Origin: Octopus sinensis
Taxonomy: Eukaryota
Direction of reading: 5' to 3'
DNA length: 64,000 nucleotides
Assembly (NCBI RefSeq): GCF_006345805.1
Contig: NC_043000.1
Span: forward strand, 9,548,001-9,612,000
Shown here: one piece after another, positions 2,020 to 62,436 of the stretch
Position numbering within the stretch: position 1 is the first letter of the stretch
How the letters are laid out: the number at the start of each line of letters is the position of its first letter
The notes under the pieces: generated by a model
Databases searched by the model: none
Told to the model about the DNA's origin: nothing
The model's input: only the letters and a program-made list of their open reading frames with translations
Translations under genes and position numbers: made by a program

Positions 2020-2590
2020 TAGGTGCAGGAGTGGCTGGGTGGTAAGAAGCTTGCTTCCCACCCACATGGTTCCAGCTTCAGTCCTACCTTGAGCAAGTGT
2101 CTTCTACTATAGCCTCAGGCTGACCAAGGTCTTGTAAGTGGATTTGGTGGAAAGAAACTGAAAGAAGCCTGTCATATATATATCATCATCATCATCATTT
2201 AACGTCCGCTTTCCATGCTAGCATGGGTTGGACGATTTGACTGAGGGCTGGTGAACCAGATGGTTGCACCAGTCTCCAATCTTGATTTGGTAGAGTTTCT
2301 ACAGCTGGATGCCCTTCCTAACGCCAACCACTCCGAGATATATATATATACACGTGTGTGTGTGTGTGTGTGTGTGCGTGCATGCATATTTGTTTGACAG
2401 TGTTTGTCCCCCACCATCGCTTGACAACCGATGTTGGTGTGTTTACATCTCTGTGACTTAGGAGTTTGGCAAAAATGAGACCGATAGAATAAGTACTAAG
2501 CTTACAAAGAATAAGTCCTGGGATCAATTCCTTCAACTAAAGATAGTACTCCAGCATGGCCACAGTCAAATGACTGAAACAAGTAAAACA
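2020..2590 (+). mobile_element. tRNA-derived SINE (family S1), interrupted by an RTE 3' fragment
   Basis: Head taggtgcaggagtggctg..ggtaagaagcttgc, core ccttgggcaagtgtcttctactatagcc, internal TA/TG microsatellite, tail gaaacaagtaaaa. Other S1 copies or parts lie near 2925, 6370, 17554, 22685, 23975, 35225, 36530, 37163, 55615(-), 57075, 57810(-), 59547, 60160(-) and 62185. Confidence 0.85.
2182..2337 (-). mobile_element. 5'-truncated RTE LINE 3' end inserted in the SINE's internal (TA)n
   Basis: Matches the 3' ends of the long RTE copies ((ATC)n-tttaacgtccgctttccatgctagcatgg); (TA)n on both sides. Confidence 0.85.
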
Positions 2591-4935: not shown

Positions 4936-4973
<38 letters not shown>

Positions 4974-5471
4974 AAAGGTTTGAAAATGCAATTTAAACAA
5001 TGTTTATTTACTTAACCGGTTTCACTCTTTGGTAAAAGATTGTCAAAAGTAACATTGAATATTATGGGTTCAAAACAAGTTTTTTACATAATTGTCACAT
5101 TGAATATTATGAATTCAAAAATGTTTTTTTATACATAATTGTCACATTACATGTATAAATATAGTGTTTGGTAACAGAGATATGTTAAGAGCATAAAAAA
5201 GTTCAATAGTGTGATGAGAATATTTGGAAAAATTGGCAGAAAAGAATAAAACAAATATATTATTGGAAATTTGGTTGCGTTAATTATTGGTTGTCGCAAA
5301 TTGTCACATTACATGTATATATATACAGTCTTTGGTAGAAAGGACATGTTAAAGACATAAGGAAGTGTAATAGTTTGGTGAGAACGCTTGTAATATTGAC
5401 AGAGAAAATTAAAATGGATATTTTAGACATCTCAGAATATTTTGAATCAAAGGCGAGAACTTATATATATA

Positions 5472-6643: not shown

Positions 6644-6902
6644 AGACCTGGTAGAAACAGCAGCCAAATCTCCCTCAAATCACACCTTACTGTCTTGTGT
6701 ATGTATATATATATGAGCCAATGAGGGGGACCTCTACATGGTAGCTAGACCTGGTAGAAATAGCAGCCAAATTTCCCCCAAATCACACCTTACTGTCTTA
6801 TCTATGTATATATGTATGAGCCTATGAGGGAGACCCCTACATGGCAGCTAGACATGGTAGAAATAGCAGCCAAATCTCCCTCAAATCACACCTTACTGTC
6901 TT
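6644..6902. repeat. 103-bp tandem repeat, about 2.5 copies
   Basis: agac(c/a)tggtagaaa.agcagccaaat... recurs at 6644, 6747 and 6850. Confidence 0.85.
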
Positions 6903-7532
6903 ATCTTTCTGCTACTTGGATATAGGTCTTATATTCTTCGTAAAAAACTTTCCTGTCACACACTCACGCACACGCTCACACACACGCACCCTCACACACA
7001 CACACATGCGCACACACACTCACACACACGCACGTTAGCTTACAATTTTATTTATATATTTGCGTGTCTATGTGTGGAAAGAGGAAGTGGGAGGCAGAGT
7101 GAAAGAATCACTCACTACAGTAAGTCAATTACTTTCATTTTATTCGTTGCCCACTGTGTGTGTGCGTTTGCGTGTGGTGTAAACCAGACTAAGAAAAGTA
7201 TTTGACACACACACCAGAATGTGAGTTTTCTGTAAATTTTGCTTAATTGGAGTTTAAATTTTAAAAACTGGACCTGGCATGACGCGATGCATTGTACTCT
7301 CAAAAATGCTAGGTAAATTGTAATTGAAGAAATCCTATATTGTAGATTTGTATAACTCCCAAAGGGAGGCAGATAAAATCTGCTTTTATAATAAGAGATA
7401 AAATTCACACACACACCCACACACACAAAATACAAACCTATAGCGTACACACTCAAATATATCTCTACATACCGCACACACACACAAACAATGTATTCAC
7501 ATATACACACATACCATGCATATACACACACA

Positions 7533-7573
<41 letters not shown>

Positions 7574-8500
7574 AAAACAAATACACATGTAAATACATAC
7601 ACATGTGTGTTGTGTGTGTATGTGTGTTATATATGTGTGTATATTATATATAGATACATGTTATATTTGTGTGCTGTGTGTATATATTATATATGTGGGT
7701 GCGTTGTGTGTGTGTGTTCTGTGTGTGTGTTGTGTGTATGTGGTGTGTGTTTGTATACTATGTGTGTGTGTGTGTGTGTATATATGTGTGTGACAAACAG
7801 ACGCTGTCTGACCAGCAGGCACATGGACACATCTATTCACACCCGCATACTCACCTCCCGATAACCCCAAAATCATTGATGCTTGAAGGGGAACCATAAA
7901 CCAAACTGGGTACACATCTTTTTTTCTCTCAATTCAACTTTTCTGCTAAAACAAACAGGTCAGTAAAAAACAAATTCTCGCCTTTGATTCAAAATATTCT
8001 GAGATTTCTAAAATATCCATTTTAATTTTCTCTGTCAATATTACAAGCTTTCTCACCAAACTATTACACTTCCTTATGTCTTTAACATGTCCTTTCTACC
8101 AAAGACTGTATATATATACATGTAATGTGACAATTTGTGACAACCAATAATTAACGCAACCAAATTTCCAATAACATATTTGTTTTATTCTTTTCTGCCA
8201 ATTTTTCCAAATATTCTCATCACACTATTGAACTTTTTTATGCTCTTAACATATCTCTGTTACCAAACACTATATTTATACATGTAATGTGACAATTATG
8301 TATAAAAAAACATTTTTGAATTCATAATATTCAATGTGACAATTATGTAAAAAACTTTTTTTGAACCCATAATATTCAATGTTACTTTTGACAATCTTTT
8401 ACCAAAGAGTGAAACCGGTTAAGTAAATAAACATCGTTTAAATTGCATTTTCAAACCTTTTTTCATATATAATCCCACTCGTGCGATACCCCACAACTCA

Positions 8501-8544: not shown

Positions 8545-11310
8545 ATCATCATCATCATCGTTTAACGTCCGTTCTCCCTGCTAGCATGGGTTGGACGGTT
8601 CGACCGGGGATCTGGGAAGCCAGAAGGCCGCACCAGGCTCCAGTCTTATCTGGCAATGTTTCTACAGCTGGATGCCCTTTCTAACGCCAACCACTCCGTG
8701 AGTGTAGTGGGAGATTTTTACGTGCCACCCGCACAGGTGCCAGGTGAGGCTGGCAACGGCCACGGTCGGATTGGTGCATTTTACGTGCCACCGGCACGGA
8801 AGCCAGTCAGGGTGGCACTGGCTTCGGCCATGATTTGGATGGTGCTTTTTACGTGCCACCGGCACGTAAGGCAGTCGAGGCGGCGCTGGCATCAGCCACG
8901 ATTCGGATAGTGCTTTTTACGTACCATCAGTCCAGGGGTCCTGGCATCTGCCGGGTACCAGTCATAGGATTGGTTCAATTTCGATTCCGATTTCGCTTTC
9001 ACTTGCCCCAACAGGTCTTTGCAAGCAAAGGGGGGTTGGCATGGGTGCCTGCGTCGGATGAGGTTCAATATTGACTTCGCTTGTCTCAACAGGTCTTTGT
9101 GTGTCCAAGGGAGGAAAGGCATGCATAAGTGGGCTGGACTCACTTGTCCTGCCTGGTCTTCTCGCGTACAGCATATTTCCAAAGGTCTCGATCGCTGGTC
9201 ATTTCCTCAGTGAGGCATAAAGTTCGAAGGTCGTGGTTCACCACCTCGTCCCAGGTTTTCCTGGGTCTACTTCTTCCACGGGTTCCCTCAACTGCTAGGG
9301 ATTGGCTCATTTTCACACACCTATCTTCATCCATTCTCACCACATGACCATACCAGCGCAATCGTCTTTCTTGCACACCACAACTGATGCTTCTTAGGTA
9401 CAACATTTCTCTCAAGGTGCTAACGCTCTGTCGAGTAAGTACACTGACATTACACATCCATCGGAGCATACTGGCTTCATTCCTCGTGAGCTTATGCATG
9501 TCCTCAGCAGTCACGGCCCATGTTTCACTGCCATGTAGCATAGCTGTTCGTACACATGCATCATACAGTCTGCCTTTTACTCTGAGCGAGAGGCCTTTAC
9601 TCACCAGCAGAGGTAAGAGCTCCCTAAACTTTGCCCAGGCTATTCTTACTCTAGCAGTTACACTTTCAGCGCACCCACCCCCACTACTGACTTGGTCACC
9701 TAGATAACGGAAGCTATCAACTACTTCTAGTTTTTCCCCCTGGAAAGTGACGGAAGTTGTTTTCTGCAGATTTTCAGAGGTTAATGCTCCCGAGCATCTG
9801 CCACATACAAAAACTATCTTCCCAGTTAGCCTTCCTTTGACATTGCTGCACCTCTTATGTGTCCATAGCTTACACTGGGTACATCTTATAGAGTTTCTAC
9901 CTACACCTTTTCTACAGATCGAGCAGGGCCATCTTCCTGAAGTACTTTGGTTTTAGCTTGGTTGATTCTAAGGCCTCTCGATTCTAAACCCTCCTTCCAC
10001 ACCTGGAACTTCTCCTCCAGTTCTGATAGTGACTCAGCAATTAGAGCAAGGTCGTCAGCATAGAGGCGCTCCCAGGGGCAACCCGTCTTGAATTCCTCCG
10101 TAATTGCCTGGAGGACTATGATAAATAGGAGGGGGCTGAGTACTGAACCCTGGTGGACCCCAACCTCTACTTTGAATTCTTCTGTGTACATGTTGCCAAC
10201 CCTAACCTTACTTACGGCATCCCTGTACATGGCTTGCACAGCCCTCACCAGCCATTCATCTATCCCTAGTTTCCTCATTGACCACCAGATAAGGGATCGG
10301 GGGACCCTGTCAAAGGCTTTCTCCATGTCAACGAAAGCCAGGTACAGGGGCTTATCTTTGGCTAGGTATTTCTCCTGCAGCTGCCTTACCAGGAATATAG
10401 CATCAGTGGTACTTTTCCCTGGCACGAACCCAAACTGCATCTCATCTAAACTAACTCTCTCTCTAATTAGTTGGGCTATGACCCTCTCCGTAACCTTCAT
10501 TACCTGATCCAACAGCTTGATACCTCTGTAATTATTTGTATCTAGGGCGTCACCTTTACCTTTGTAGCAGTTGACTAGTATGCTGCTTAACCAGTCATTG
10601 GGTATGACTCCTTCGTGTATCACCTGGTTAACTATACGGGTGACTAGGTTATAGTCGACACTGCCAGATATTTTGAGCATCTCTGCAGTAGTTCCTGATG
10701 GGCCTGGGGCTTTCCCTGTCTTCTTGCTTCTAATTGCTTTAACTACCAAAGAATTGTCAACTCGGATGGCTGGTCCCTCTGTTGGGTTGACATTTGGCAG
10801 ACTCTCTTTATCCCATTCATTTTCTTTATTCAGCAACCTTTCATAGTGGCATCTCCAAACCTCTCTCTTTGCATCCTCATTTAGCGCAAGTGAACCATCA
10901 TCCATGCGGGCACATTTCTCTCCTACCACATCACGATTCTCTCTCACACACTGTCTTGCAACACAAAATACCTCAAGTCTTTCATCCTCACGGCTCAGAA
11001 CATTGGCAAATTTTTTCTTATCCGCTTCCCCTCTGGCTAAATAAACCTGTCTCCTAGCTTCCCTTCTGGCTGTCTGATACAATTCCCTGCTACCACCGTT
11101 CTTCCAGTCCCTCCAAGCCTGTTTCTTTTGTCTAATAGCCCTGTCAACCACATTGTTCCACCACCACGTTACTCTGGGTTGAGATGGTACTTTGCTCCAT
11201 CCACAGATCTGGTCAGTGGCTGTCAGCAGATTGTCCCGTAGAAATCTCCAGTTGTCTTCCACATTAAGTGAAGCTATATCCCCTTCTATTTTGTCAAAGG
11301 CTTCGAGTAG
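8545..11310 (-). mobile_element. RTE-clade LINE copy 1, 5'-truncated, antisense within intron 2 of the TIR-SAM gene
   Basis: RT ORF 9901-11370 (QFGF, VHQGSVLSPLLF, YADD), frameshifted C-terminus 9140-9604, 3' UTR with 4 hairpin units, (GAT)n tail, (TA)n on both flanks. Confidence 0.95.
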
Positions 11311-11325
11311 TATATATATATATGT

Positions 11326-11460
11326 ATCAAAGTAAATGTGAAACAAGGTGGAAAAATAGTACTCGAACACCAGACGTAGAATAATGTTTTATTAAAAAGC
11401 ACCAAAAATATCACAAGAACTGTTACTCAGAGTTTCATATTCCCGTTCATGTAACAGTTT
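11326..11460 (-). mobile_element. Penelope-like remnant with partial hammerhead (3' half)
   Basis: Minus strand reads aaactgt tacatga acgggaatat GAAA CTC T GAGT A acagtt. Same family as 36793-36950 and 51140-51290 (shared caaggtggaaaaa.agtactc). Confidence 0.5.
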
Positions 11461-16789: not shown

Positions 16790-16925
16790 GGGAATCCAGC
16801 TGTAGAAACTCTGCCAGATCAGATTGGGGTCTGGTGCAGCTATCTGGTTTGCCAGACCTCAGTCAAATCGTCCAACCCATGCTGGCATGGAAAGCAGATG
16901 TTAAACGATGATGATGATGATGATG
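16790..16925 (+). mobile_element. RTE LINE 3' end fragment (a decayed minus-strand one lies at about 16384-16530)
   Basis: catccagctgtagaaac...ccaacccatgctggcatggaaagcagatgttaaacgatgatgatg. Confidence 0.8.
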
Positions 16926-25200: not shown

Positions 25201-25712
25201 CTCTCCCTCACACACACACATACACACAAATATGCATATACTGACAATGCCACCTGTTTGTTGTCTGTTAACAGAGAAATTTAAAATTTACAATCACAAC
25301 TAGCATTTCATCAGTTATGATGCTAAGAGTTCCAGTTGATCCAACCAATGGAACAGGCAGCTTGAGAAATTAATGGGCAAGTGGCTGAGCATTCCACAGA
25401 CACACATACCCTTAACATAGTTCTCAGGGAGTGTCAGTGTGACACAGAATCTGACACGTTGGCCCCTTTGAAATACAAGTACTAGTCATTTTTGCCCGCT
25501 GAAATTAAGTGTCATCTTCAAGTACACAACACATAGCCGGAAAAAAAAAACTAATGGCCAACCTTACGATCATGAGCTGAATACCTAACCACTAAGCCAT
25601 GCACCTTCACTTTACAGCTACATTTCATTGTGAACTCAAAATATCACTTCTTTGTGTTGATGGTTGCCAATATATTACAGAATTAGTGTTGATAGCTTTT
25701 ATTTGCAATTCA

Positions 25713-28700
25713 CATCATCATCATCATTTAACGTCCGCTTTCCATGCTAGCATGGGTTGGACGGGTCAACTGGGGTCTGGGGAGCCCGAAGGCTGCACCA
25801 GGCTAGTCAGATCTGGCAGTGTTTCTACAGCTGGATGCCCTTCCTAACGCCAACCACTCCGAGAGTGTAGTGGGTGATTTTATGTGCCACCGACACAGGT
25901 GCCAGACGAGGCTGGCAAATGGCCACGCTCGGATGGTGTTTTTATGTGCCACCGACACAGGTGCCAGACAAGGCTAGAAGACGACCACGCTCAGGATGGT
26001 GTTTTTATGTGCCACCGACACAGGTGCCAGATGAGGCTGGCGAACGGCCACGCTCGGATGGTGTTTTTTTTATGTGCCACCGACACAGGAGCCAGATTAG
26101 GCTGGCGATCGGCACCGACACAGGTGCCAGACAAGGCTAGCAGACGACCACGCTCGGATGGTGTTTTTATGTGCCACCGACACAGGTGCCAGACGAGGCT
26201 GGCGAACGGCCACGCTCGGATGGTGTTTTTATGTGCCACCGACACAGGTGCCAGACAAGGCTAGCAGACGACCACGCTCGGATGGTGTTTTTATGTGCCA
26301 CCGACACAGGTGCCAGACGAGGCTGGCGAACAGCCACGCTCGGATGGTGTTTTTTTTTATGTGCCACCGACACAGGAGCCAGATTAGGCTGGCGATCGGC
26401 ACCGACACAGGTGCCAGACAAGGCTAGCAGACGACCACGCTCAGATGGTGTTTTTATGTGCCACCGACACAGGTGCCAGACGAGGCTGGCGAACGGCCAC
26501 GCTCGGATGGTGTTTTTTTTTATGTGCCACCGACACAGGAGCCAGATTAGGCTGGCGATCGGCACCGACACAGCTGCCAGACAAGGCTAGCAGACGACCA
26601 CGCTTGGATGGTGTTTTTATGTGCCACCGACACAGGTGCAGACAGACGGGCTGGCGAACGGCCACGCTCGGATGGTGTTTTTATGTGCCACGACACAGGT
26701 GCCAGACAAGGCTAGCAGACGACCACGCTCGGATGGTGTTTTTATGTGCCACCGACACAGGTGCCAGACGAGGCTGGCCGAACTGCCACGCTCGGATGGT
26801 GTTTTTATGTGCCACCGACACAGGTGCCAGACAAGGCTAGCAGACGACCACGCTCGGATGGTGTTTTTAGTGCCACCGACACAGGTGCCAGACGAGGCTG
26901 GCGAACGGCCACGCTCGGATGGTGTTTTTTTTTATGTGCACCGACACAGGAGCCAGATTAGGCTGGCGATCGGCACCGACACAGGTGCCAGACAAGGCTA
27001 GCAGACGACCACGCTCGGATGGTGTTTTTATGTGCCACCGACACAGGTGCCAGACGAGGCTGGCGAACGGCCACGCTCGGATGGTGTTTTTTTTTATGTG
27101 CCACCGACACAGGAGCCAGATTAGGCTGGCGATCGGCACCGACACAGGTGCCAGACAAGGCTAGCAGACGACCACGCTCGGATGGTGTTTTTATGTGCCA
27201 CCGACACAGGTGCCAGACGAGGCTGGCGAACGGCCACGCTCGGATGTGTTTTTTTTTATGTCCACCACGACACAGGAGCCAGATTAGGCTGGCGATGGGC
27301 ACGACACAGGTGCCAGACAAGGCTAGCAGACGACCACGCTCGGATGGTGTTTTTATGTGCAACCGACACAGGTGCCAGATGAGGCTGGCGAACGGCACGC
27401 TCGGATGGTTGTTTTTTTATGTGCCACCGACACAGGAGCCAGATTAGGCTGGCGATCGGCACCGACACAGGTGCCAGACAAGGCTAGCAGACGACCACGC
27501 TCGGGGTGTTTGTTTTTATGTGCCACCGACACAGGTGCCAGACGAGGCTGGCGAACGGCCACGCTCGGATGGTGTTTTTATGTGCCACCGACACAGGTGC
27601 CAGACAAGGCTAGCAGACGACCACGCTCTCGGATGGTGTTTTTATGTGCCACCGACACAGGTGCCAGACGAGGCTGGCGAACGGCCACGCTCGGATGGTG
27701 TTTTTATGTGCCACCGACACAGGTGCAGACAAGGCTAGCAGACGACCATGCTCGGATGGTGTTTTTATGTGCCACCGACACAGGTGCCAGACAAGGCTAG
27801 CAGACGACCACGCTCGATGGTGTTTTTATTGCCACCGACACAGGTGCCAGACGAGGCTGGCGACGGCCACGCTCGGATGGTGTTTTTATGTGCCACCGAC
27901 ACAGGTGCCAGACAAGGCTAGCAGACGACCATGCTCGGATGGTGTTTTTATGTGCCACCGACACAGGTGCCAGACAAGGCTAGCAGACGACCACGCTCGG
28001 ATGGTGTTTTTATGTGCCACCGACACAGGTGCCAGACGAGGCTGGCGAACGGCCACGCTCGGATGGTGTTTTTATGTGCCACCGACACAGGTGCCAGACA
28101 AGGCTAGCAGACGACCACGCTCGGATAGTGTTTTTTTTTTATGTGCCACCGACACAGGAGCCAGATTAGGCTGGCGATCGGCCACGATTGGATGGTGATT
28201 GTTACGTGCCCACAGCATGGAGGCCAGTCGGTGGCGGTACTTGGCTACGGCCACGTTCGGATGGTTTTCTTGTGTGCCACCGGCACTGGTACCACAAAGA
28301 TACAAATTCCATGATGTTCATCTATTTTGATTTTGTTTGATTTTCACTTGCTCAACAGGTCTTCACAATGTCACAAGAAGAAAGGTATGCACAGGTGGAC
28401 TGACTACGTCCAGGTAGGGGCCACGGGTTATGGCCTGACTAGTCTTGCCGGGTCTTCTCACGCACAGCATACTTCCATAGGTCTCGGTCTCTAGTCATTT
28501 CCTTGGTGAGACCTAAAGTTCGTAGGTCGTGCTTCACCACTTCGTCCCAGGTTTTCCTGGGTCTACCTCTACCACAGGTTCCCTCAACTGCTAGGGTGTA
28601 GCACTTTTGCACACAACTATCTTCAGCCATTCTCGTCATATGACCATACCAGCCGCAGCCGTCTCTCTTGCACACCAAAACTGACGCTTCTTAGGTTCAA

Positions 28701-31700
28701 CTTTTCTCTCAAGGTACTTACACTCTGACGATTATGAACACTGACATTACACATCCATCGGAGCATACTGGCTTCATTTCTTGCGAGCTTACGCATATCC
28801 TCAGCAGTCACGGCCCATGTTTCACTACCATGTAGCATGGCTGTACGTACACATGCATCATAAAGTCTGCCTTTTACTCTGAGCGAGAGGCCTTTTGTCA
28901 CCAGCAGGGGTAAGAGCTCACTAAACTTTGCCCAGGCTATTCTTACTCTAGCAGTTACACTTTCAGCACACCCACCCCCGCTACTGACTTGGTCCCTCCT
29001 AGGTAGCGGAAGCTATCAACTACTTCTAGTTTGTCTCCCTGGAACGTGGTAGAAGTTGGTCTCTGCACATTTCCAGTGTTTTTTCTCCTGAGCATCTGCC
29101 ACATACGAAAACTATCTTCCCAGTTAGCCTACCTTTGACATTGCTGCACCTCTTATGTGTCCATAGCTTACACTTGGTGCACCTTATAGAGTTTCTCTAC
29201 CTACACCTTTTTTACAGATCGAGCAGGGCATCTACCTGAAGTCGTTTGTGGTTGGTCCACCTTCCTACTTATTAGGACTTTGGTTTTGGCTAGGTTGATT
29301 CTAAGGCCCTTCGATTCTAATCCTTGTTTCCACACCTGAAACTTCTCCTCCAGTTCTGATAGTGACTCAGCAATTAGAGCAAGGTCATCAGCATAGAGGA
29401 GCTCCCAGGGGCATCCTGTCTTAAATTCTTCCGTTATTGCCTGGAGGACTATGATAAATAGGAGGGGGCTGAGGACTGAACCTTGGTGGACACCAACCTC
29501 TACGCGGAATTCTTCACTGTACTCGTTGCCAACCCTCACCTTACTAGCAGCGTCTCTGTACATGGCTCGCACAGCTCTCACTAACCATTCATCTATCCCT
29601 AGTTTCCTCATTGACCACCAGATAAGGGATCGGGTGACCCTGTCGAAGGCTTTCTCCATATCACAAAAGCCAGGTATATGGGCTTACCTTTGGCTAGGTA
29701 TTTCTCCTGCAGCTGTCTTACCAGGAGATATCATCAGTATACTTTTCCCTGGCACGAACCCAAACTGCATCTCATCTAAGCTAACTCTCTCTCTAATTAA
29801 GTGGGCTATAACCCTCTCTGTAACCTTCATTACCTGATCCAGCAGCTTGATACCCCTCTAGTTATTTGTATCTAGGGCGTCACCTTTACCTTTGTAGCAG
29901 TTGACTATTATGCTGCTACACCAGTCATTGGGTATGACTCCTTCGTGTATCACCTGGTTAACTATACGGGTGACTAGGCTATAGCCGACACTACCAGATA
30001 TTTTGAGCATCTCTGCAGTAATTCCTGATGGGCCTGGGGCTTTCCCTGTTTTCATGCTTCTAATTGCCTTAGCTACCACGGAACTATCAACTCGGATAGC
30101 TGGTCCCTCTGTTGGGTCAACATTCGGCAGACTCTCTTTATCCCATTCATTTTCCTCATTCAGCAACCTTTCAAAGTGGCGTCTCCAAGCTTCTCTCTTT
30201 GCATCCTCATTTAGCGCAAGTGAACCATCCTCCATGCGAACACATTTCTCTCCTACCACATCACGATTCTCTCTCACACACTGTCTTGCAACACGAAATA
30301 CCTCAAGTCTTTCATCCTCACGGCGCAGGACATTGGCAAATTTTCTCTTATCTGCTTCCCCTCTGGCTAGATAGACCTGTCTCCTAGATTCCCTTCTGGC
30401 AGTCTGATACACTTCCCTGCTACCACCGTTCTTCCAAGCCTGTTTCTTTTGTCTAATAGCCCTGTCAACAATATTGTTCCACCACCACGTTATTTTGGGT
30501 CTTAAGGGGACTTTGCACCAGCCATAGATCTGGTCAGCGGCTTTCAGCAGGTTGTCCCTCAGAAACGTCCAGTTGTCTTCTACCCCATGTGTAGCTATAC
30601 CCCCTTCCATTTCATCAAAGGCTTCAAGTAACATATCTCTAAATCTCTGTCCATTCGCAGGGTCTTTAAGCTTCCAGACCCTTCTTCTCCATGTTGGTCG
30701 TCTTCTAGTTGCCCTCTTAGTCCTGATCCCAAAGTCACTAACTACCAGTCTATGTTGTGGGGTGCATTCTTCGCCTGGGAAGGTTTTGGCATTTATAAGC
30801 AGCCATCTTTCCCTAGTCGATTTGGCTAGTATGCCGGCCCGATCGGTAGGTGACCAGGTGGCTTGTTGGTTTCCTGAAGTTAGTGTTGCAGACCATAAGA
30901 CTATTCGCATCGCAGAACTCCAGCAGCCTGGTTCCCTCCTCGTTGCAGGAACCATAACCGTAGCCTCCATGTACGCCATTGAAGCCCCCAGCATGTCGTC
31001 CAACATGCCCATTGAAATCACCAGCCACAAAGAGAAGGTCCCTGTCGTTCGTCAATGAGGTGGTCTGCAGTAGGGTGTCATAGAAACTGTCTTTCTGTCC
31101 ATCGGGTAGCCCTGGCTGAGGGGCATAGGCCGATATAATGGTTGCTAATCTATTATGAAGCACTATTCTAATCTTAAGTATTCTGTCACTTACTCTGATT
31201 ACCTCAATTACTCTATCTATCCATTTCTCAGCGATAAGTATACCCACGCCACCAACCCCGTCAGTGTTCCCTGCCCAGAATATCTTGTACCTGTGTTCCT
31301 TGCCTGTGAGGAACCTAGCAGATCCTCCTCTCCACCTTATTTCTTGCATGCAACATACATCAACACGTCTCCGTTCAAGCATCTCGACTATCTCGCCAGA
31401 CCTACTTTTCAGTGTGCCAACGTTGAGGGTGTGGAAGGTATTGACCCGAGAGGCCCAGGGACGGGGAGCAGTGGCGTCATGTACCTGAAAAGAAGAAGAA
31501 AGCTCGCATTTGGCAGAATTCATAAGCAAAGCAATGAACTTAAGTTCAACCTGTTACAATACACTATCATGTTTTTGCGCCGTATGGTCACCACCATATA
31601 TAGAAGGGGTGGTATTGGTTTAAGGCCTTTAGGTGTTCATGGAAGAAAAGCAAAGGAAGGCAAGGTGAGATAAGGACTTCCGGTACTGGTGGTGGGGGCA

Positions 31701-31990
31701 GGAGGGCGGGCGCACCGCGCACTGGGAGAAGACGAGATTTAGGCGGCAGAAAGAAAGACAAGATTTGAGATGGAATGGTTTGCGGTCATGTGCATAAGTT
31801 TCTATGAATGGAAGTTGGGAAAGATGGGTTAGAGAATTAAGCTACAGAAAGACCAGATTTGAGACGAGATGTTTTTGCGGTCGTGTGAATAAGTTTTTGT
31901 GAGCGAAAGTTTATATGCTTCAGCTAGCATTTGAGACGAAGGACAACGATAACGATAATATATGGGGACACAATAATAAGGCTTGATGGT
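25713..31990 (-). mobile_element. RTE-clade LINE copy 2, probably near full length, ORF disrupted, 3' UTR massively expanded
   Basis: APE domain 30813-31529 (NVGTL, CCMQE, SAYAPQ, AGDFNGHVG, SQID), linker and RT pieces down to 28439, 3' UTR array, (GAT)n tail at 25713. The 5' limit (31530-31990) is inferred from CpG-rich sequence. Confidence 0.92.
25878..28290 (-). repeat. about 40-unit, 62-bp minisatellite with A/B/C variants and higher-order repeats, inside the RTE 3' UTR
   Basis: Unit tttttatgtgccaccgacacaggtgccagac(g/a)aggct(g/a)gc..ccacgctcggatggtg; 124-bp AB dimers and 163-bp CBA trimers. Confidence 0.95.
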
Positions 31991-33220
31991 GATAATAATA
32001 CTTGCAAAAACAATGAAAAGAGGAACAGGTCGTGAACTTAAATATGACTTAGCTGATATTTTTCATCCTGCGGTTCGTATTTCGTGTGTTATAGCCAGTA
32101 ATAAATAAGTTTGAACTGGATTGTACAAAATGTGAATGAAAAAAACCTTCCTATATTTCACCTGGCCGTTGTTGTGGTACTAGAAAAGTTAGGTAGATGT
32201 TAACAGTATCTTCATCTAGCTAATATTTCACTATTTAAAAAACAAAATATTATTATTGTTATTATTGTGGAAGCGCAATGGCCCAGTGGTTAGGACAGCG
32301 GACTTGCGGTCGGAGGATCACGGTTTCGATTCCTAGACCGGGTATTGTGTGTGTTTATTGAGCGAAAACACCTAAAAGCTCCATGAGAATCTGGCAGGGG
32401 GTGGTGGCAACCCCCGTTGTTCTCTTTCACCACAACTTTCTCTCACTCCCTTTTCCTGTTTCTTGAGGAATGCTGCGATGAACTGGCGTCTCTTCCAGCC
32501 GGGGGGAACACATACGCCACAGAAACCTGGAAACTGAGCCCATGAGCCTGGCTAGGCTTGAAAAAGTTATTATATTCGTGAGGTGGAAAACTGGCAGAAT
32601 CATTAGCACACTAGGCAAAATGCTTGGCAGCATTTTGTCTACCTTTACGTTCTGAGTTCAAATTCTGCTGAGGTTGACTTTGCCTTTCATCCTTTCCGGG
32701 TCAATAAAATAAATATCATTTAAGTAACTAGAGTTTATCTAATTGACTTACTCCCATCCCCTGAGCTTGCTAGACTTGTACGAAAATCTGAGGCCAATAT
32801 TTCACCATTTTTGTCTTTAGTTACTATCAGGAATTGGAACGGTTGGTAAGCACTCTGTGTTATCTGTTGAAACTTTGGTCAACCTGTAAAATGCTGGAGT
32901 ATTTCTTTGTAAATGCTGAAGCTAAACAACATATTCTTTGCATTTATTTCTGCCATTATTAATGACTAAAAGAGCAGCTGAGCACCAAATAATTAGTTCA
33001 GATCTGTTTGTTCAAATTCTACCAGAGTCAATTATTTTGCTTTCCATCAATCTGCCTGGGTTGCAGGTAGATAAAATAAAATACCAGTCATTTACTGAGG
33101 TCTGGGTTGTTTAATATAATCCTTTGTTCACTGCTTTGTAAAATTGTGGTTTTGTGTGACCATGAGAAACCATTATTTACAGTAAATAATATTTATTGAT
33201 GTCAGATGTATGTATATGTA

Positions 33221-36950: not shown

Positions 36951-37337
36951 TATATATATATATGTATATATATATAGTTGTCCTTTTTGATAAAACACTG
37001 CACGCTGCTATCTGTATTAATTTCCTATATATGTGTGTGTGTGTGTGTGTGTATGTATATATATATATATACACATTTATATGTTTGTGTGTATATATAA
37101 ATATATATATGTATCATCATCATCGTTTAACGTCCGTTCTCCATGCTAGCATGATATACATATAGGTGCAGGTGTGACTGTGTGGTAAGAAGCATGCTTC
37201 CCAACCACATGCTTCTGAGTTCAGTCCCACTGCATGGCACCTTGGGCAAGTGTCTTCTACTATAGCCTTGGGCCGACCAAAGCCATGTTAGTGGATTTGG
37301 TTTGAAAGAAGCTCATCATATATATATATACATATAA

Positions 37338-37653
37338 CCGTGTCGGTGGCACGTAAAAGCACCATCCGTTCGTGTCCGTTGCCAGCATCGCCTGGCCCCG
37401 TGTCGGTGACACGTAAAAGCACCATCCGTTCGTGGCCATTCGCCAGCTCTGTCTGGCACCTGTGCAGGTGGCACGTAAAAAACACCCACTACACTCGCGG
37501 AGTGGTTGGCGTTAGGAAGGGCATCCAGCCGTAGAAACACTGCCAGATCTGACTGGGCCTGACGAAGCCTTCCAGCTTCACAGACCCCAGTTGACCCGTC
37601 CAACCCATGCTAGCATGGAAAGCAAACTAAATGATGATGATGATGATGATGAT
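37338..37653 (+). mobile_element. RTE 3' UTR fragment (3 hairpin units plus tail), head-to-tail upstream of copy 3
   Basis: Same 3' UTR sequence and (ATG)n tail; inserted after an S1 SINE head plus (TA)n. Confidence 0.9.
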
Positions 37654-37663
37654 ACATATATAC

Positions 37664-52246: not shown

Positions 52247-52847
52247 CTATTTCTTTACTACCCACAAAGGGCTAAACACAGAGAGGACAAACAAGGACAG
52301 ACAAACGGATTAAGTCGATTATATCGACCCCAGTGCGTAACTGGTACTTATTTAATCGGCCCCGAAAGGATGAAAGGCAAAGTCGACCTCGGCGGAATTT
52401 GAACTCACAACGCAGCGGCAGACGAAATACCTATTTCTTTACTGCCCACGAGGGGCTAAACATAGAGGGGACAAACAAGGACAGACAAACGGATTAAGTC
52501 GATTATATCGACCCCAGTGCGTAACTGGTACTTATTAATCGGCCCCGAAAGGATGAAAGGCAAAGTCGACCTCGGCGGAATTTGAACTCACAACGCAGCG
52601 GCAGACGAAATACCTATTTCTTTACTGCCCACGAGGGGCTAAACATAGAGGGGACAAACAAGGACAGACAAACGGATTAAGTCGATTATATCGACCCCCA
52701 GTGCGTAACTGGTACTTGTTTAATCGATCCCGAAAGGATGAAAGGCAAAGTCGAACACGGCGGAATTTGAACTCAGAACGTAACGGCAGACGAAATACCG
52801 CTAAGCATTTCGCCTGGCGCGCTAACGTTTCTGCCAGCTCGCCGCCT
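52247..52847 (-). mobile_element. head-to-tail trimer of SINE S3
   Basis: Units start at 52247, 52431 and 52614 (periods 184 and 183 bp); only the last carries the complete head. Confidence 0.92.
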
Positions 52848-61089: not shown

Positions 61090-61760
61090 AAGGAGAAGGA
61101 TGAATGATGATGATGATGATGGGGAGGAGGAGGAGGAGGAGAAGAAGACCGATATAGAAGTCAGAAGAAGAATGCAGGTCGAGAAAGAGAAGAGTGAAAA
61201 GAAGACAGAAGAATGGAGAGAAGTTAGAAGAAAAAGAAGAAGAAGGAGAAAAGAAGATGAAGTGAGAAGAAAAAGAAGAGGAAAAATGTGAAGACAGAAG
61301 AAGAAAAAAAGGAAGAAGTTGAAGACAGAATAAGAACCAGAAGCGGAAAGAGAAGAGGAAAATGTGAAGACAGAAGAAGACAAAGAAGAAGAGGAAAAAG
61401 AAGAAGAGGAAGAGAAGAAGAGGAAAAAGAAGATGAAGACAGAAGAAGAAGAAGGCGAAGCCAGAAGAAAAAAAGACAGAAGAAGAAGAAGAAGAAAAAG
61501 ACAGAAGAAGAAGAAGAAGGCGAAGCCAGAAGAAGAAAAAGACAGAAAAAAAGGGAGAAGAGGAAAAGGCGAAGACAGAAGAAAAAAAAGGTGAAGACAG
61601 AAGAAAAAGAAGATGAAGACAGAAAAAGATGAAAAAGAAGAAGAAGGTGAAGAGAGAAGAAGAAAAAGAAGATGAAGATAGAAGAAGACGAAGAGGAAGA
61701 AGAAGAGGAAGATGTAGATGGTGAAGATAGAAGGTTAAGACAGAAGACGAAGAATAAGGA
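61090..61760. repeat. polypurine (GAA/GAG)-rich low-complexity tract
   Basis: Almost pure A/G with a recurring gaagacagaagaagaa word. Confidence 0.9.
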
Positions 61761-62436
61761 GAATATGTAGAAGTAGACAGACAGATACGCGAAGAGCGAA
61801 TCTAACGGTGAAGTGTAGAATGTAATTGCATGTTGATATACGGCTGTATTAGACTCATTCCATGTTCTACTTCGACATTATATTTTGTAAAAAAAAAAGA
61901 TAAGGAATCGCGCGAAACGTCTACAATTTCATCAAGATCACTGCTAAGCTTTAAATATAAACTCTAATATAAACTTCTGATGTATGAAAGCCGATGGAAT
62001 AAGCCAAGAAAAAGATCTGGTTTATTTTATTAACGGTGTATATTACATTTTCATCTCATCAGTTAGTGGTTAGCGATGATAATGTGTTAAAACAAATATA
62101 AGTAAATATATATTCTCTCACTCCCACGAATAACAAAACAAAACAAAAATATTCTATCGCGACTGGTATAATGAATTATATAGGCGCAGGCGTGGCTACG
62201 TGGTAAGAAGCTTGTTTCCCAAACATATGGTTCCGGGTTCTGTCTCACTGCATGTCACCCTGCGTGAATGTCTTCTACTATAGCCTTGAGAGTGGACTTG
62301 GTAGGCAGAAACTGTATATATATATATTTATAAATGAGGGTGAAAAATTTGATATTAATTTAATAATACCATCAATTTAACACCAAGTGGCTTAGCACAT
62401 AAAAACCAAGGGAAAAATACAAATTTATACATAAAT

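What the first reader, a model, noticed from the sequence alone, without database searches (positions are those of the whole stretch)
25878..28290. A LINE 3' UTR amplified into a 40-unit higher-order hairpin array (2.4 kb)
Seen: a module present about 4 times in copy 1 (8717-8920) and 5-6 times in copy 3 (40795-41090) occurs about 40 times here. My reading of the order is ABA-C-BABA-C-BA-C-BABABA-C-BA-C-BA-C-BA-C-BABA-BBA-BBA-B-C, then two divergent terminal units. C units are always preceded by a longer T run and, except for the last, truncate into B. So amplification went by multi-unit blocks (124 and 163 bp), like satellite higher-order repeats. Inference: either a satellite being born inside a retrotransposon, or a tunable multivalent RNA platform (about 80 hairpins per transcript) carried by a subfamily, acting for example in ORF-protein binding, RNP condensation, localisation or small-RNA production. 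Scattered 1-nt indels look like long-read errors, so the exact copy number is uncertain.
Basis: partly seen in the sequence, partly recalled or inferred. Interest (0 to 1): 0.75.

Follow-up and report, generated by a model that had tools for sequence, protein, structure and literature searches.

The report
Expanded tandem repeat in dead LINE tail
One decayed copy of an octopus RTE-like jumping gene has blown up the 3-5 short repeats normally found in its 3' untranslated region into a 40-unit, 2.3-kb block-structured minisatellite, which is a clean example of a known process (mobile-element repeats seeding satellite-like DNA), not a new kind of RNA device.

Summary
One divergent unit (D) follows.

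The array lies on the minus strand in the 3' UTR of a decayed APE+RT LINE. It sits between the stop codon (28439-28441) and a 161-nt tail module plus (ATG)5.

Six other copies of the same family carry only 3-5 units (≥5 in L006). Three are in the window and three are in Octopus vulgaris loci reached through mis-annotated "proteins". The closest relative has a tail 97.8% identical and only three units, one of them a C/B recombinant. Another copy has an independent A-only expansion with a different block order.

The array grew stepwise:
- a single illegitimate junction (C') next to a GCCAC microhomology;
- amplification of 163-, 124- and about 186-bp blocks.

Two small hairpins per unit are predicted. 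Fold energies are not better than shuffles, and covariation is weak.

Best reading: neutral, locus-specific minisatellite growth by unequal exchange or slippage in a dead copy. The "RNA platform carried by a subfamily" idea has no support here. The excess of 1-nt indels suggests consensus errors, so the exact copy number is uncertain. This is a new member of a known kind, of low to moderate interest.

The parts
25713..25727 (-). (ATG)5 microsatellite tail of the LINE, read as a CAT run on the + strand; this is the 3' end of the element
   Evidence: Sequence read. The same (ATG)n tail ends copies 1, 2 and 3 and the O. vulgaris copies.
25728..25888 (-). 161-nt tail module shared by all copies. 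It ends in the perfect palindrome CCATGCTAGCATGG (25742-25755) and a relic reading frame [13 protein letters not shown]-stop.
   Evidence: Motif searches. Tail alignment gives 97.8% identity to L007a and 86-94% among the other copies. In related elements L003 and L004 the same motif is the real C-terminal coding end of the ORF.
25889..28210 (-). The expanded array: 40 units (15 A and 17 B of about 62 nt, 7 truncated C' of 35 nt, 1 full C), organised in blocks of 124 bp (B-A), 163 bp (B-A-C') and about 186 bp (B-B-A)
26080..26114 (-). First of seven truncated C' units. The others start at 26367, 26530, 26941, 27104, 27267 and 27427. Each is the left 35 bp of the locus's own full C joined to a B unit next to a GCCAC microhomology.
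   Evidence: Six of the seven are identical, and all share the private variants of the full C at 28149-28210 (AGCCAGATTAGG, GCGATCGG).
28211..28278 (-). Unit D, a divergent 68-nt unit at the 5' (ORF-proximal) edge of the array. It is not amplified.
   Evidence: It is orthologous to the D units of L007a and L007b.
28279..28438 (-). Non-repetitive spacer of the 3' UTR between the stop codon and the units
   Evidence: It aligns to the L007a spacer.
28439..28441 (-). Stop codon (TAG) of the LINE ORF (...KTRQD-stop)
   Evidence: Sequence read. tblastn of the copy 1 C-terminus against F ends at 28442.
28442..31529 (-). Decayed single ORF of the LINE. It contains an APE endonuclease (30813-31529), a reverse transcriptase (29201-29659) and a PHD-like finger, and is broken by frameshifts and at least 3 in-frame stops.
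   Evidence: ORF list. Pfam: Exo_endo_phos 7.9e-09 and RVT_1 1.4e-19; PHD 2e-4 in copy 3. tblastn.
8548..9139 (-). Comparator: 3' UTR of copy 1, with a spacer, 3 units, the tail module and a tail
37330..37645 (+). Comparator: copy 2, 5'-truncated inside the units, with 2.3 units, the tail module and (ATG)8
40680..41266 (+). Comparator: 3' UTR of copy 3, with a spacer, 5 units of 61 nt, the tail module and (ATG)n. The body of copy 3 is 93.3% identical to F.

Best explanation
This is a neutral, locus-specific minisatellite. It grew inside the 3' UTR of one dead copy of an octopus RTE-like LINE.

The family's 3' UTR normally holds a short run of 61-68-nt tandem units between the ORF and a conserved tail module. 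For this subfamily the inferred ancestral order is D-C-B-A. That short run is a substrate for out-of-register pairing.

Inferred steps at this locus:
1. In-register unequal sister-chromatid or homologue exchange, or replication slippage, multiplied the B-A dimer (124 bp).
2. One illegitimate join next to a GCCAC microhomology fused the left 35 bp of C to a B unit, creating C'.
3. The resulting 163-bp block (B-A-C' on the + strand) was amplified about seven times.
4. A roughly 186-bp B*-B-A block was duplicated later.
5. CpG decay followed, and the assembly consensus added 1-nt indels.

Shown directly:
- the anatomy, the unit order and the single shared junction;
- the block periodicities;
- the 3-5 units seen in other copies;
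- both a contraction and an independent expansion in relatives.

Inferred:
- the DNA-level mechanism;
- growth after insertion;
- the absence of function.
For: - **Array and block structure.**
- **Position.** The array lies between the ORF stop and the tail of a minus-strand APE+RT element.
- **Unit counts in other copies.** Copy 1 has 3, copy 2 at least 2.3, copy 3 has 5, L007a 3, L007b 5 and L006 at least 5.
- **Contraction in the nearest relative.** L007a shares a 97.8% identical tail with F. It has D, a C/B recombinant unit and A. That is a contraction of the same D-C-B-A region.
- **Independent expansion.** L006 is an A-only expansion with its own 126-bp dimer and private variants. Length changes are therefore recurrent, go in both directions and are specific to each locus.
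- **One junction event.** All seven C' units share one junction and carry the private variants of this locus's own full C. One event was therefore followed by block amplification.
- **Growth in steps.** Private CpG-to-CpA variants are shared by blocks about 183 bp apart, at 27896-27957 and 27714-27774.
- **Dead carrier.** The carrier ORF has frameshifts and at least 3 in-frame stops.
- **Homogeneous units.** They differ from their type consensus by about 0.8-0.9% substitutions. F-private divergence in the body is 2.3%.
- **Precedent.** Short tandem arrays in retroelement 3' UTRs are a documented source of longer arrays (PMC7004042, PMC12692304).
Against: - **Timing is not resolved.** F and L007a differ by only about 2.6%, so F may be about 1.3% old. 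That is not much more than the divergence inside the array.
- **Pre-insertion growth remains possible.** Expansion in a master copy, or by reverse-transcriptase template switching at insertion, is not excluded.
- **Small, biased sample.** Only three outside copies were reachable, and they were found through array-derived ORFs. Other copies with the same C' junction could exist.
- **No boundary confirmation.** No target-site duplication or empty site was found to fix the insertion boundaries.
- **No reads.** The copy number rests on the assembly alone.
Confidence: 0.6

Rival explanations
1. The expansion happened before or during insertion. Either a master lineage of this subfamily gradually lengthened its 3' UTR array, or the reverse transcriptase repeatedly switched template register on the tandem units during target-primed reverse transcription. 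In either case the copy was born long.
For: - Unit number and unit types differ between subfamilies (61-nt units in copy 3, the D-C-B-A types in F). The region therefore evolves in masters too.
- F's full C differs by about 13% from the L007a recombinant unit, although the tails differ by about 2%. Differences in the unit region therefore predate insertion.
- Divergence inside the array (about 0.8%) is close to the estimated age of the insertion (about 1.3%).
- Template switching during replication has been proposed for the 3' UTR repeats of plant LTR elements (PMC7004042).
Against: - The nearest relative has 3 units.
- No second copy with a C' unit or the same order was seen.
- The nested blocks carry shared CpG-decay variants. 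That needs several rounds separated by genomic mutation, not one reverse-transcription run.
- The carrier ORF is broken.
Confidence: 0.25
2. The array is an assembly artefact. Its true length is much shorter or different, and a long-read assembler inflated or mis-ordered it.
For: - There are about 20 small indels in 2.3 kb, an indel:substitution ratio near 1:1. The ratio is 1:5 in the body of the same copy and 1:20 in copy 3. That points to a poorly polished consensus.
- The body of copy F also has more 1-nt indels (8) than copy 3 (2) or copy 1 (0).
Against: - The array has an orderly, non-random block structure with shared private variants and intact, unique edges (D and the spacer on one side, the tail on the other).
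- 2.4 kb is easily spanned by single long reads.
- Assemblers more often collapse such arrays than expand them (general knowledge).
- A modest independent expansion exists in a different assembly (L006).
Confidence: 0.08
3. The array is a functional multivalent RNA platform. It would give a sense transcript with about 80 small hairpins that binds the element's protein, drives condensation or localisation, or feeds small-RNA production, and its copy number would be under selection.
For: - Two small stem-loops per unit (GCCAG-N6-CUGGC and CGUGCC-GGU-GGCACG) are predicted in the least decayed units.
- They pair in 93.5% of cells across 14 distinct units, with two compensatory changes. The covariation score was reached by only 6 of 500 shuffles.
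- The B variant keeps its stem through a G-U wobble.
Against: - Fold energies of units and dimers are not better than shuffles (z from -0.35 to -1.8; only one unit of copy 1 reaches -3.3).
- One of the two compensatory pairs is a double CpG decay in a palindrome, expected by chance about one time in four.
- Wobble-forming and pair-breaking changes are about equally frequent.
- There is no Rfam match.
- The carrier is dead, and the relatives have 3-5 units with different orders.
- Related RTE elements lack the units altogether.
Confidence: 0.05

Closest known systems
Tandem repeats in the 3' UTR of plant Ogre/Tat LTR retrotransposons that expand into satellites (Macas et al. 2009; Vondrak et al. 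2020, PMC7004042)
   Same: Both are short arrays of tens-of-bp units just downstream of the coding region of a retroelement. Both are hypervariable in number and sequence between element lineages. In both, occasional copies expand far beyond the usual length, so the element disperses 'seeds' around the genome.
   Different: Those are LTR elements in plants, and some of their arrays reach satellite scale and are seen cytologically. This is a non-LTR (RTE-like) element in an octopus, and only one 2.3-kb expansion is documented.
The VNTR region of hominid SVA/LAVA composite retrotransposons (from my own knowledge, not checked in a paper here)
   Same: Both are internal arrays of 35-60-bp GC-rich units inside a retrotransposon, with block (higher-order) substructure. 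In both, unit number varies widely between copies and can change both in the source element and after insertion.
   Different: SVA is a non-autonomous composite mobilised by L1, and its VNTR is central, not in the 3' UTR. For SVA, population polymorphism and effects on expression are documented. Nothing of that kind is known here.
Simple-repeat 3' ends of RTE-clade LINEs, including octopus RTE-2_OV, whose 3' UTR is mostly microsatellite (Petrosino et al. 2022, PMC9115989)
   Same: Same element class and host genus. In both, the 3' UTR is dominated by tandem repeats and ends in a short-unit tail, here (ATG)n.
   Different: The repeat here is a 61-68-nt unit with internal stem-loops, not a 3-5-nt microsatellite. 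It sits upstream of a conserved 161-nt tail module.
Higher-order repeat organisation of satellite DNA such as alpha satellite (general knowledge)
   Same: In both, multi-monomer blocks are more alike than neighbouring monomers (163-bp period 94% against 62-bp period 73%). Both show diagnostic monomer types in a fixed order and less homogenised edge units.
   Different: Here the scale is 2.3 kb against megabases. It is a single euchromatic locus inside a transposon, with no centromeric or heterochromatic context shown.
Satellite-like arrays carried by Helentron/Helitron elements in oysters (PMC7492417)
   Same: Both are mollusc genomes in which mobile elements carry and disperse short tandem arrays that vary in length.
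   Different: Those are DNA (rolling-circle) transposons with unrelated repeats, documented genome-wide.

Membership tests
RTE-clade non-LTR retrotransposon (host element) | Single ORF encoding an N-terminal apurinic-type endonuclease followed by a reverse transcriptase | tested here: met
   Pfam Exo_endo_phos (7.9e-09) at 30813-31529 and RVT_1 (1.4e-19) at 29201-29659, on the same strand and in that order. Copy 3 gives RVT_1 at 5.3e-24.
RTE-clade non-LTR retrotransposon (host element) | No separate ORF1 upstream; compact size of about 3.2-3.6 kb | tested here: met
   No sense-strand ORF of at least 80 aa lies upstream of 31529. The ORF of about 3.1 kb plus a normal 3' UTR of about 0.5 kb gives about 3.6 kb. 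Published RTE-BovB means are 3.2-3.6 kb (PMC10294476). The 5' end was not defined.
RTE-clade non-LTR retrotransposon (host element) | 3' end made of short tandem repeats, not poly(A) | tested here: met
   An (ATG)n tail ends all copies.
RTE-clade non-LTR retrotransposon (host element) | Placement of the RT domain inside the RTE clade in a phylogeny with reference LINEs | not tested
   No reference LINE set was available. The best database relatives are unnamed. The PHD-like finger after the RT was not checked against RTE references.
Minisatellite / VNTR | Head-to-tail units of roughly 10-100 bp forming an array of 0.5 kb to tens of kb | tested here: met
   40 units of 35-67 bp over 2322 bp.
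Minisatellite / VNTR | Copy number varies between alleles or individuals | not testable with these tools
   There is only one haplotype of this locus. Variation between paralogous copies (3 to 42 units) is shown, but that is not allelic variation.
Higher-order repeat | A multi-monomer period is more homogeneous than the monomer period, with monomer types in a fixed order | tested here: met
   Period 163 bp has 94% matches (26237-26713 and 26813-27611), against 73% for period 62 bp over 26563-28210. The B-A-C' order recurs seven times.
Satellite DNA in the classical sense | Long arrays (tens of kb or more) at many loci or in heterochromatin, forming an abundant genome fraction | tested here: not met
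   There is one 2.3-kb array in the window. Exact unit patterns are absent from the metagenome, viral and prokaryote genome collections. Genome-wide abundance in the host could not be measured.
Structured functional RNA element | Folding more stable than composition predicts | tested here: not met
   Unit and dimer folds give z-scores from -0.35 to -1.8. Only one unit of copy 1 reaches -3.3.
Structured functional RNA element | Base pairs maintained by compensatory changes | tested here: inconclusive
   93.5% of cells are paired, and 2 of 11 pairs show double changes. The covariation score was reached by 6 of 500 shuffles. The sequences are related paralogues, and one of the double changes is explained by CpG decay in a palindrome.
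Structured functional RNA element | Match to a curated RNA family, or evidence of expression | tested here: not met
   No Rfam match at E up to 1 in 25500-29000. Expression cannot be tested here.

The most novel reading that the evidence does not exclude
The tandem units in this octopus RTE family's 3' UTR are a cis-acting, hairpin-bearing module whose copy number affects retrotransposition or RNA fate. On that reading, long-array variants like this one mark a propagating sub-lineage rather than a dead-end locus. They would be a LINE counterpart of the SVA VNTR, with a dose-dependent RNA function.
Probability: 0.05. Interest if true: 0.6.

Novelty: new member of a known kind. Interest (0 to 1): 0.25.

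Why it matters
This is a tidy, base-resolved example of how a short tandem run carried by a LINE becomes a block-structured array. The founding illegitimate junction is still readable, and related copies show both contraction and independent expansion.

- For cephalopod genomics, it flags the 3' UTR of this abundant RTE-like family as a hypervariable, VNTR-like region. Such a region can seed satellite-like DNA and confuse assembly polishing.
- The arrays also generate spurious gene models. Two 'hypothetical proteins' of Octopus vulgaris are translations of such arrays.
- It does not open a new mechanism. The principle is established for other transposon classes.

Tried and rejected
- **Rfam.** A scan of 25500-29000 at E up to 1 found nothing.
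- **Exact-pattern scans for the unit.** GGTGGCACRTAAAARCACCATCC gave no match in metagenome, viral or prokaryote-genome contigs.
- **Terminal-motif scans.** These returned only distant RTE relatives (L001-L003) and nothing in prokaryote genomes.
- **Protein search with the LINE ORF.** It found only relatives of 57-63% identity without the units. The host's own LINE copies are evidently not gene-called in that collection.
- **Protein search with the sense-strand array ORF.** No hits.
- **Target-site duplication.** A search between the 3' flank and 31400-33000 found only an 8-mer, so the 5' end of the copy is undefined.
- **Coding reading rejected.** The + strand ORFs of up to 184 aa through the array exist only because the 62-bp unit lacks stops. 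They cycle through all three frames every 186 bp and have no Pfam domain or real homologues.
- **Tandem double-insertion model rejected.** The repeated block contains neither the tail module nor (ATG)n.
- **Thermodynamic support for a hairpin array.** This was sought and not found.
Full report
**Observation**

Tandem Repeats Finder reports overlapping arrays of period 62, 124, 163, 287 and 325 bp across 25873-28210. I cut the region at the recurrent CCGACACAGG anchor and classified each unit by its diagnostic core. Three rows that indels had merged were split by hand.

This gives 40 units in the order ABA-C-BABA-C-BA-C-BABABA-C-BA-C-BA-C-BA-C-BABA-BBA-BBA-B-C on the + strand.

- Every C is preceded by a T7-T10 run instead of T5.
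- Every C but the last is cut after ...GATCGGC and continues as B.
- The 163-bp period has 94% matches. The 62-bp period has 73% over the same stretch. The block (higher-order) organisation is therefore real.

**What carries the array**

The array belongs to an element on the minus strand.
- Broken ORF pieces at 30813-31529, 29858-31030, 29201-29659 and 28623-28901 carry an apurinic-type endonuclease and a reverse transcriptase. A PHD-like finger is seen in copy 3.
- The ORF ends at a TAG at 28439-28441.
- Downstream in the sense direction come, in order:
  - a 160-nt spacer;
  - unit D (28211-28278);
  - the 40 units (28210 down to 25889);
  - a 161-nt tail module (25888-25728);
  - (ATG)5 (25727-25713).

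A single APE+RT ORF, no upstream ORF, a compact size and a microsatellite tail all fit an RTE-type LINE. I did not run an RT phylogeny. This copy, called F, is dead. tblastn against the ORFs of the other copies shows frame changes and at least three in-frame stops.

**Normal state of this 3' UTR**

Three more copies lie in the window:
- copy 1 (minus strand, 8548-11370) has 3 units;
- copy 2 (plus strand, 37330-37645, 5'-truncated) has 2.3 units;
- copy 3 (plus strand, about 37670-41266) has 5 units.

F and copy 3 are 93.3% identical over 3.0 kb of body. F and copy 1 are 87.9% identical.

A protein search with the stop-free + strand ORF of the array hit two 'Hypothetical predicted protein [Octopus vulgaris]' entries. 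Their loci are further 5'-truncated copies of the same 3' end.
- **L007a** has a tail 97.8% identical to F's. It has three units: D, a unit whose 5' half matches C and whose 3' half matches B, and A. It is a contraction of D-C-B-A by in-register exchange.
- **L007b** is older and has D', D, a C-like unit, a B/A-like unit and a deleted A. This is the same D-C-B-A order.
- **L006** has a tail 91% identical to F's. It has five A-type units with its own 126-bp dimer pattern and private variants, and it is cut at the start of D.

The family norm is therefore 3-5 units. Length changes go both up and down, they differ from locus to locus, and F is a tenfold outlier. These hits also place the window in Octopus vulgaris or a close relative.

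**How the array grew**

All seven C' units share one junction. It is the left 35 bp of this locus's own full C, including C's private variants, joined to a B unit. The join lies next to a GCCAC microhomology and has one C fewer than a clean crossover would give. That is one illegitimate event followed by amplification of the 163-bp block.

Two B units about 183 bp apart (27896-27957 and 27714-27774) share a private CpG-to-CpA change. This marks a later duplication of a roughly 186-bp B-B-A block. B differs from A at five positions, four of them C-to-T. Growth was therefore stepwise, with genomic mutation between the steps.

**Errors and age**

Against their type consensus the units show about 18-21 substitutions, roughly half of them CpG transitions. 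They also show about 20 small indels in 2.3 kb. The comparison with the copy bodies is as follows.

| Region | Private substitutions | Private indel events |
|---|---|---|
| Array (2.3 kb) | about 18-21 | about 20 |
| F body (2.1 kb) | 49 | 10 (8 small) |
| Copy 3 body (2.1 kb) | 60 | 3 |

The indel excess in the array fits consensus errors where polishing is hard. The exact unit number is therefore uncertain.

F-private substitution divergence is 2.3% against copy 3 and copy 1. F and L007a differ by only about 2.6% over 350 nt. The insertion may therefore be about 1.3% old, against about 0.8% inside the array. Timing relative to insertion is not settled by these numbers.

**Hairpins**

In the least decayed units two small stem-loops are predicted per unit:
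- GCCAG-N6-CUGGC;
- CGUGCC-GGU-GGCACG, at the unit boundary.

On 14 distinct units 93.5% of cells pair, and two pairs show double changes. The covariation score was reached by 6 of 500 shuffles.

Against this:
- Fold energies are no better than shuffles (z from -0.35 to -1.8, with one exception).
- One double change is a pair of CpG decays in a palindrome.
- Pair-breaking changes are about as common as wobble-forming ones.
- Rfam has no match.

'About 80 hairpins' is arithmetically possible but not evidenced as a selected structure.

**Origin of the units**

In more distant RTE relatives (L003, L004) the ORF runs straight into the terminal motif and ends ...RPTHASME(N/S)GR-stop, with no units. 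In the octopus family the same nucleotides survive at the very 3' end as a non-coding relic ([13 protein letters not shown]-stop, containing the palindrome CCATGCTAGCATGG). About 0.5 kb of spacer, units and tail module separates them from the ORF. The units are thus a lineage-specific addition to the 3' UTR. They are not an ancient requirement of the clade.

**Interpretation**

The best reading is neutral minisatellite growth by unequal exchange or slippage at one dead copy (confidence about 0.6). The rivals are:
- expansion in a master copy or by template switching at insertion (about 0.25);
- an assembly artefact (about 0.08);
- a functional RNA platform (about 0.05).

The few outside copies I could reach point that way, but they number only three and were found through array-derived ORFs.

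**Comparison with what is known**

Reviews list LINEs among the transposon sources of satellite DNA. They describe short arrays in the 3' UTRs of LTR retrotransposons as dispersed 'seeds' (PMC12692304). For Ogre elements this was shown directly with nanopore reads (PMC7004042). Octopus RTE elements are known to have repeat-dominated 3' UTRs (PMC9115989), and RTE-BovB types are expanded in cephalopods (PMC10294476).

This case is a new member of that known kind. It is well resolved but not mechanistically new.

**Limits**

I had no reads, no genome-wide census, no orthologous site and no expression data. The decisive checks are listed separately.

Noticed in passing
window 25728-25770 (minus strand); also L003:150-230 and L004:5820-5865: The last roughly 40 nt of the element, including the perfect palindrome CCATGCTAGCATGG, still read [13 protein letters not shown]-stop. 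In distant RTE relatives the same nucleotides are the true C-terminal coding end of the ORF, followed directly by the tail. The motif seems to be conserved as a cis element (probably the 3' recognition hairpin), even where it no longer codes.
   Followed up: partly
L006:8001-8405 and L007:8001-8390 (Octopus vulgaris GCA_951406725.2, OX597839.1 and OX597841.1): Two annotated 'Hypothetical predicted proteins' of O. vulgaris (P0121, P0122) are antisense translations of this LINE's 3' UTR units and tail module. They are spurious gene models.
   Followed up: yes
window 37600-37680: The 5'-truncated start of copy 3 lies within about 25 nt of the (ATG)8 tail of copy 2, in the same orientation. This could be tail-adjacent or nested insertion, possibly a target preference for the family's own microsatellite tail.
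   Followed up: no
window 4963-5462 and 7972-8471: 500-nt inverted repeats, 99% complementary, enclose 2.5 kb. They contain 45-bp subrepeats and end just beside the tail of copy 1. This looks like a young foldback-type or long-TIR element.
   Followed up: partly
window 52247-52799: Three tandem copies (95% matches) of a 183-bp unit that contains a tRNA-like B-box region on the minus strand. This is a SINE-like element tandemised, a second case of transposon-derived tandem repeats in the same window.
   Followed up: no
window 2195-2335 (minus) and 16790-16925 (plus); L007:8625-8790: Fragments consisting only of the tail module plus (ATG)n, without units. They are either extreme 5' truncations or short non-autonomous elements that share the LINE tail. 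The one at 2195-2335 sits next to a SINE-like sequence at 2380-2600.
   Followed up: no
window 42582-45696: About 3.1 kb of almost pure trinucleotide microsatellite (ATT/TAA/TAC variants), with GC content near 20%.
   Followed up: no
window 28442-30644 compared with 38494-40689 and 9139-11309: The body of copy F has 8 private 1-2-nt indels in 2.1 kb, against 2 in copy 3 and 0 in copy 1. This suggests locally lower consensus quality around the array, not only inside it.
   Followed up: partly
L007:6230-7953: An 84-bp-period array (20.5 copies) that reads as tandem C2H2 zinc-finger repeats. The 3-unit LINE copy L007a is inserted in or beside a zinc-finger gene cluster.
   Followed up: no
window 61188-61771 and 6644-6906: A 580-bp purine-rich (AAG)n-like tract with strong strand skew, and a 103-bp x 2.6 tandem repeat (91% matches). 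Neither was examined.
   Followed up: no
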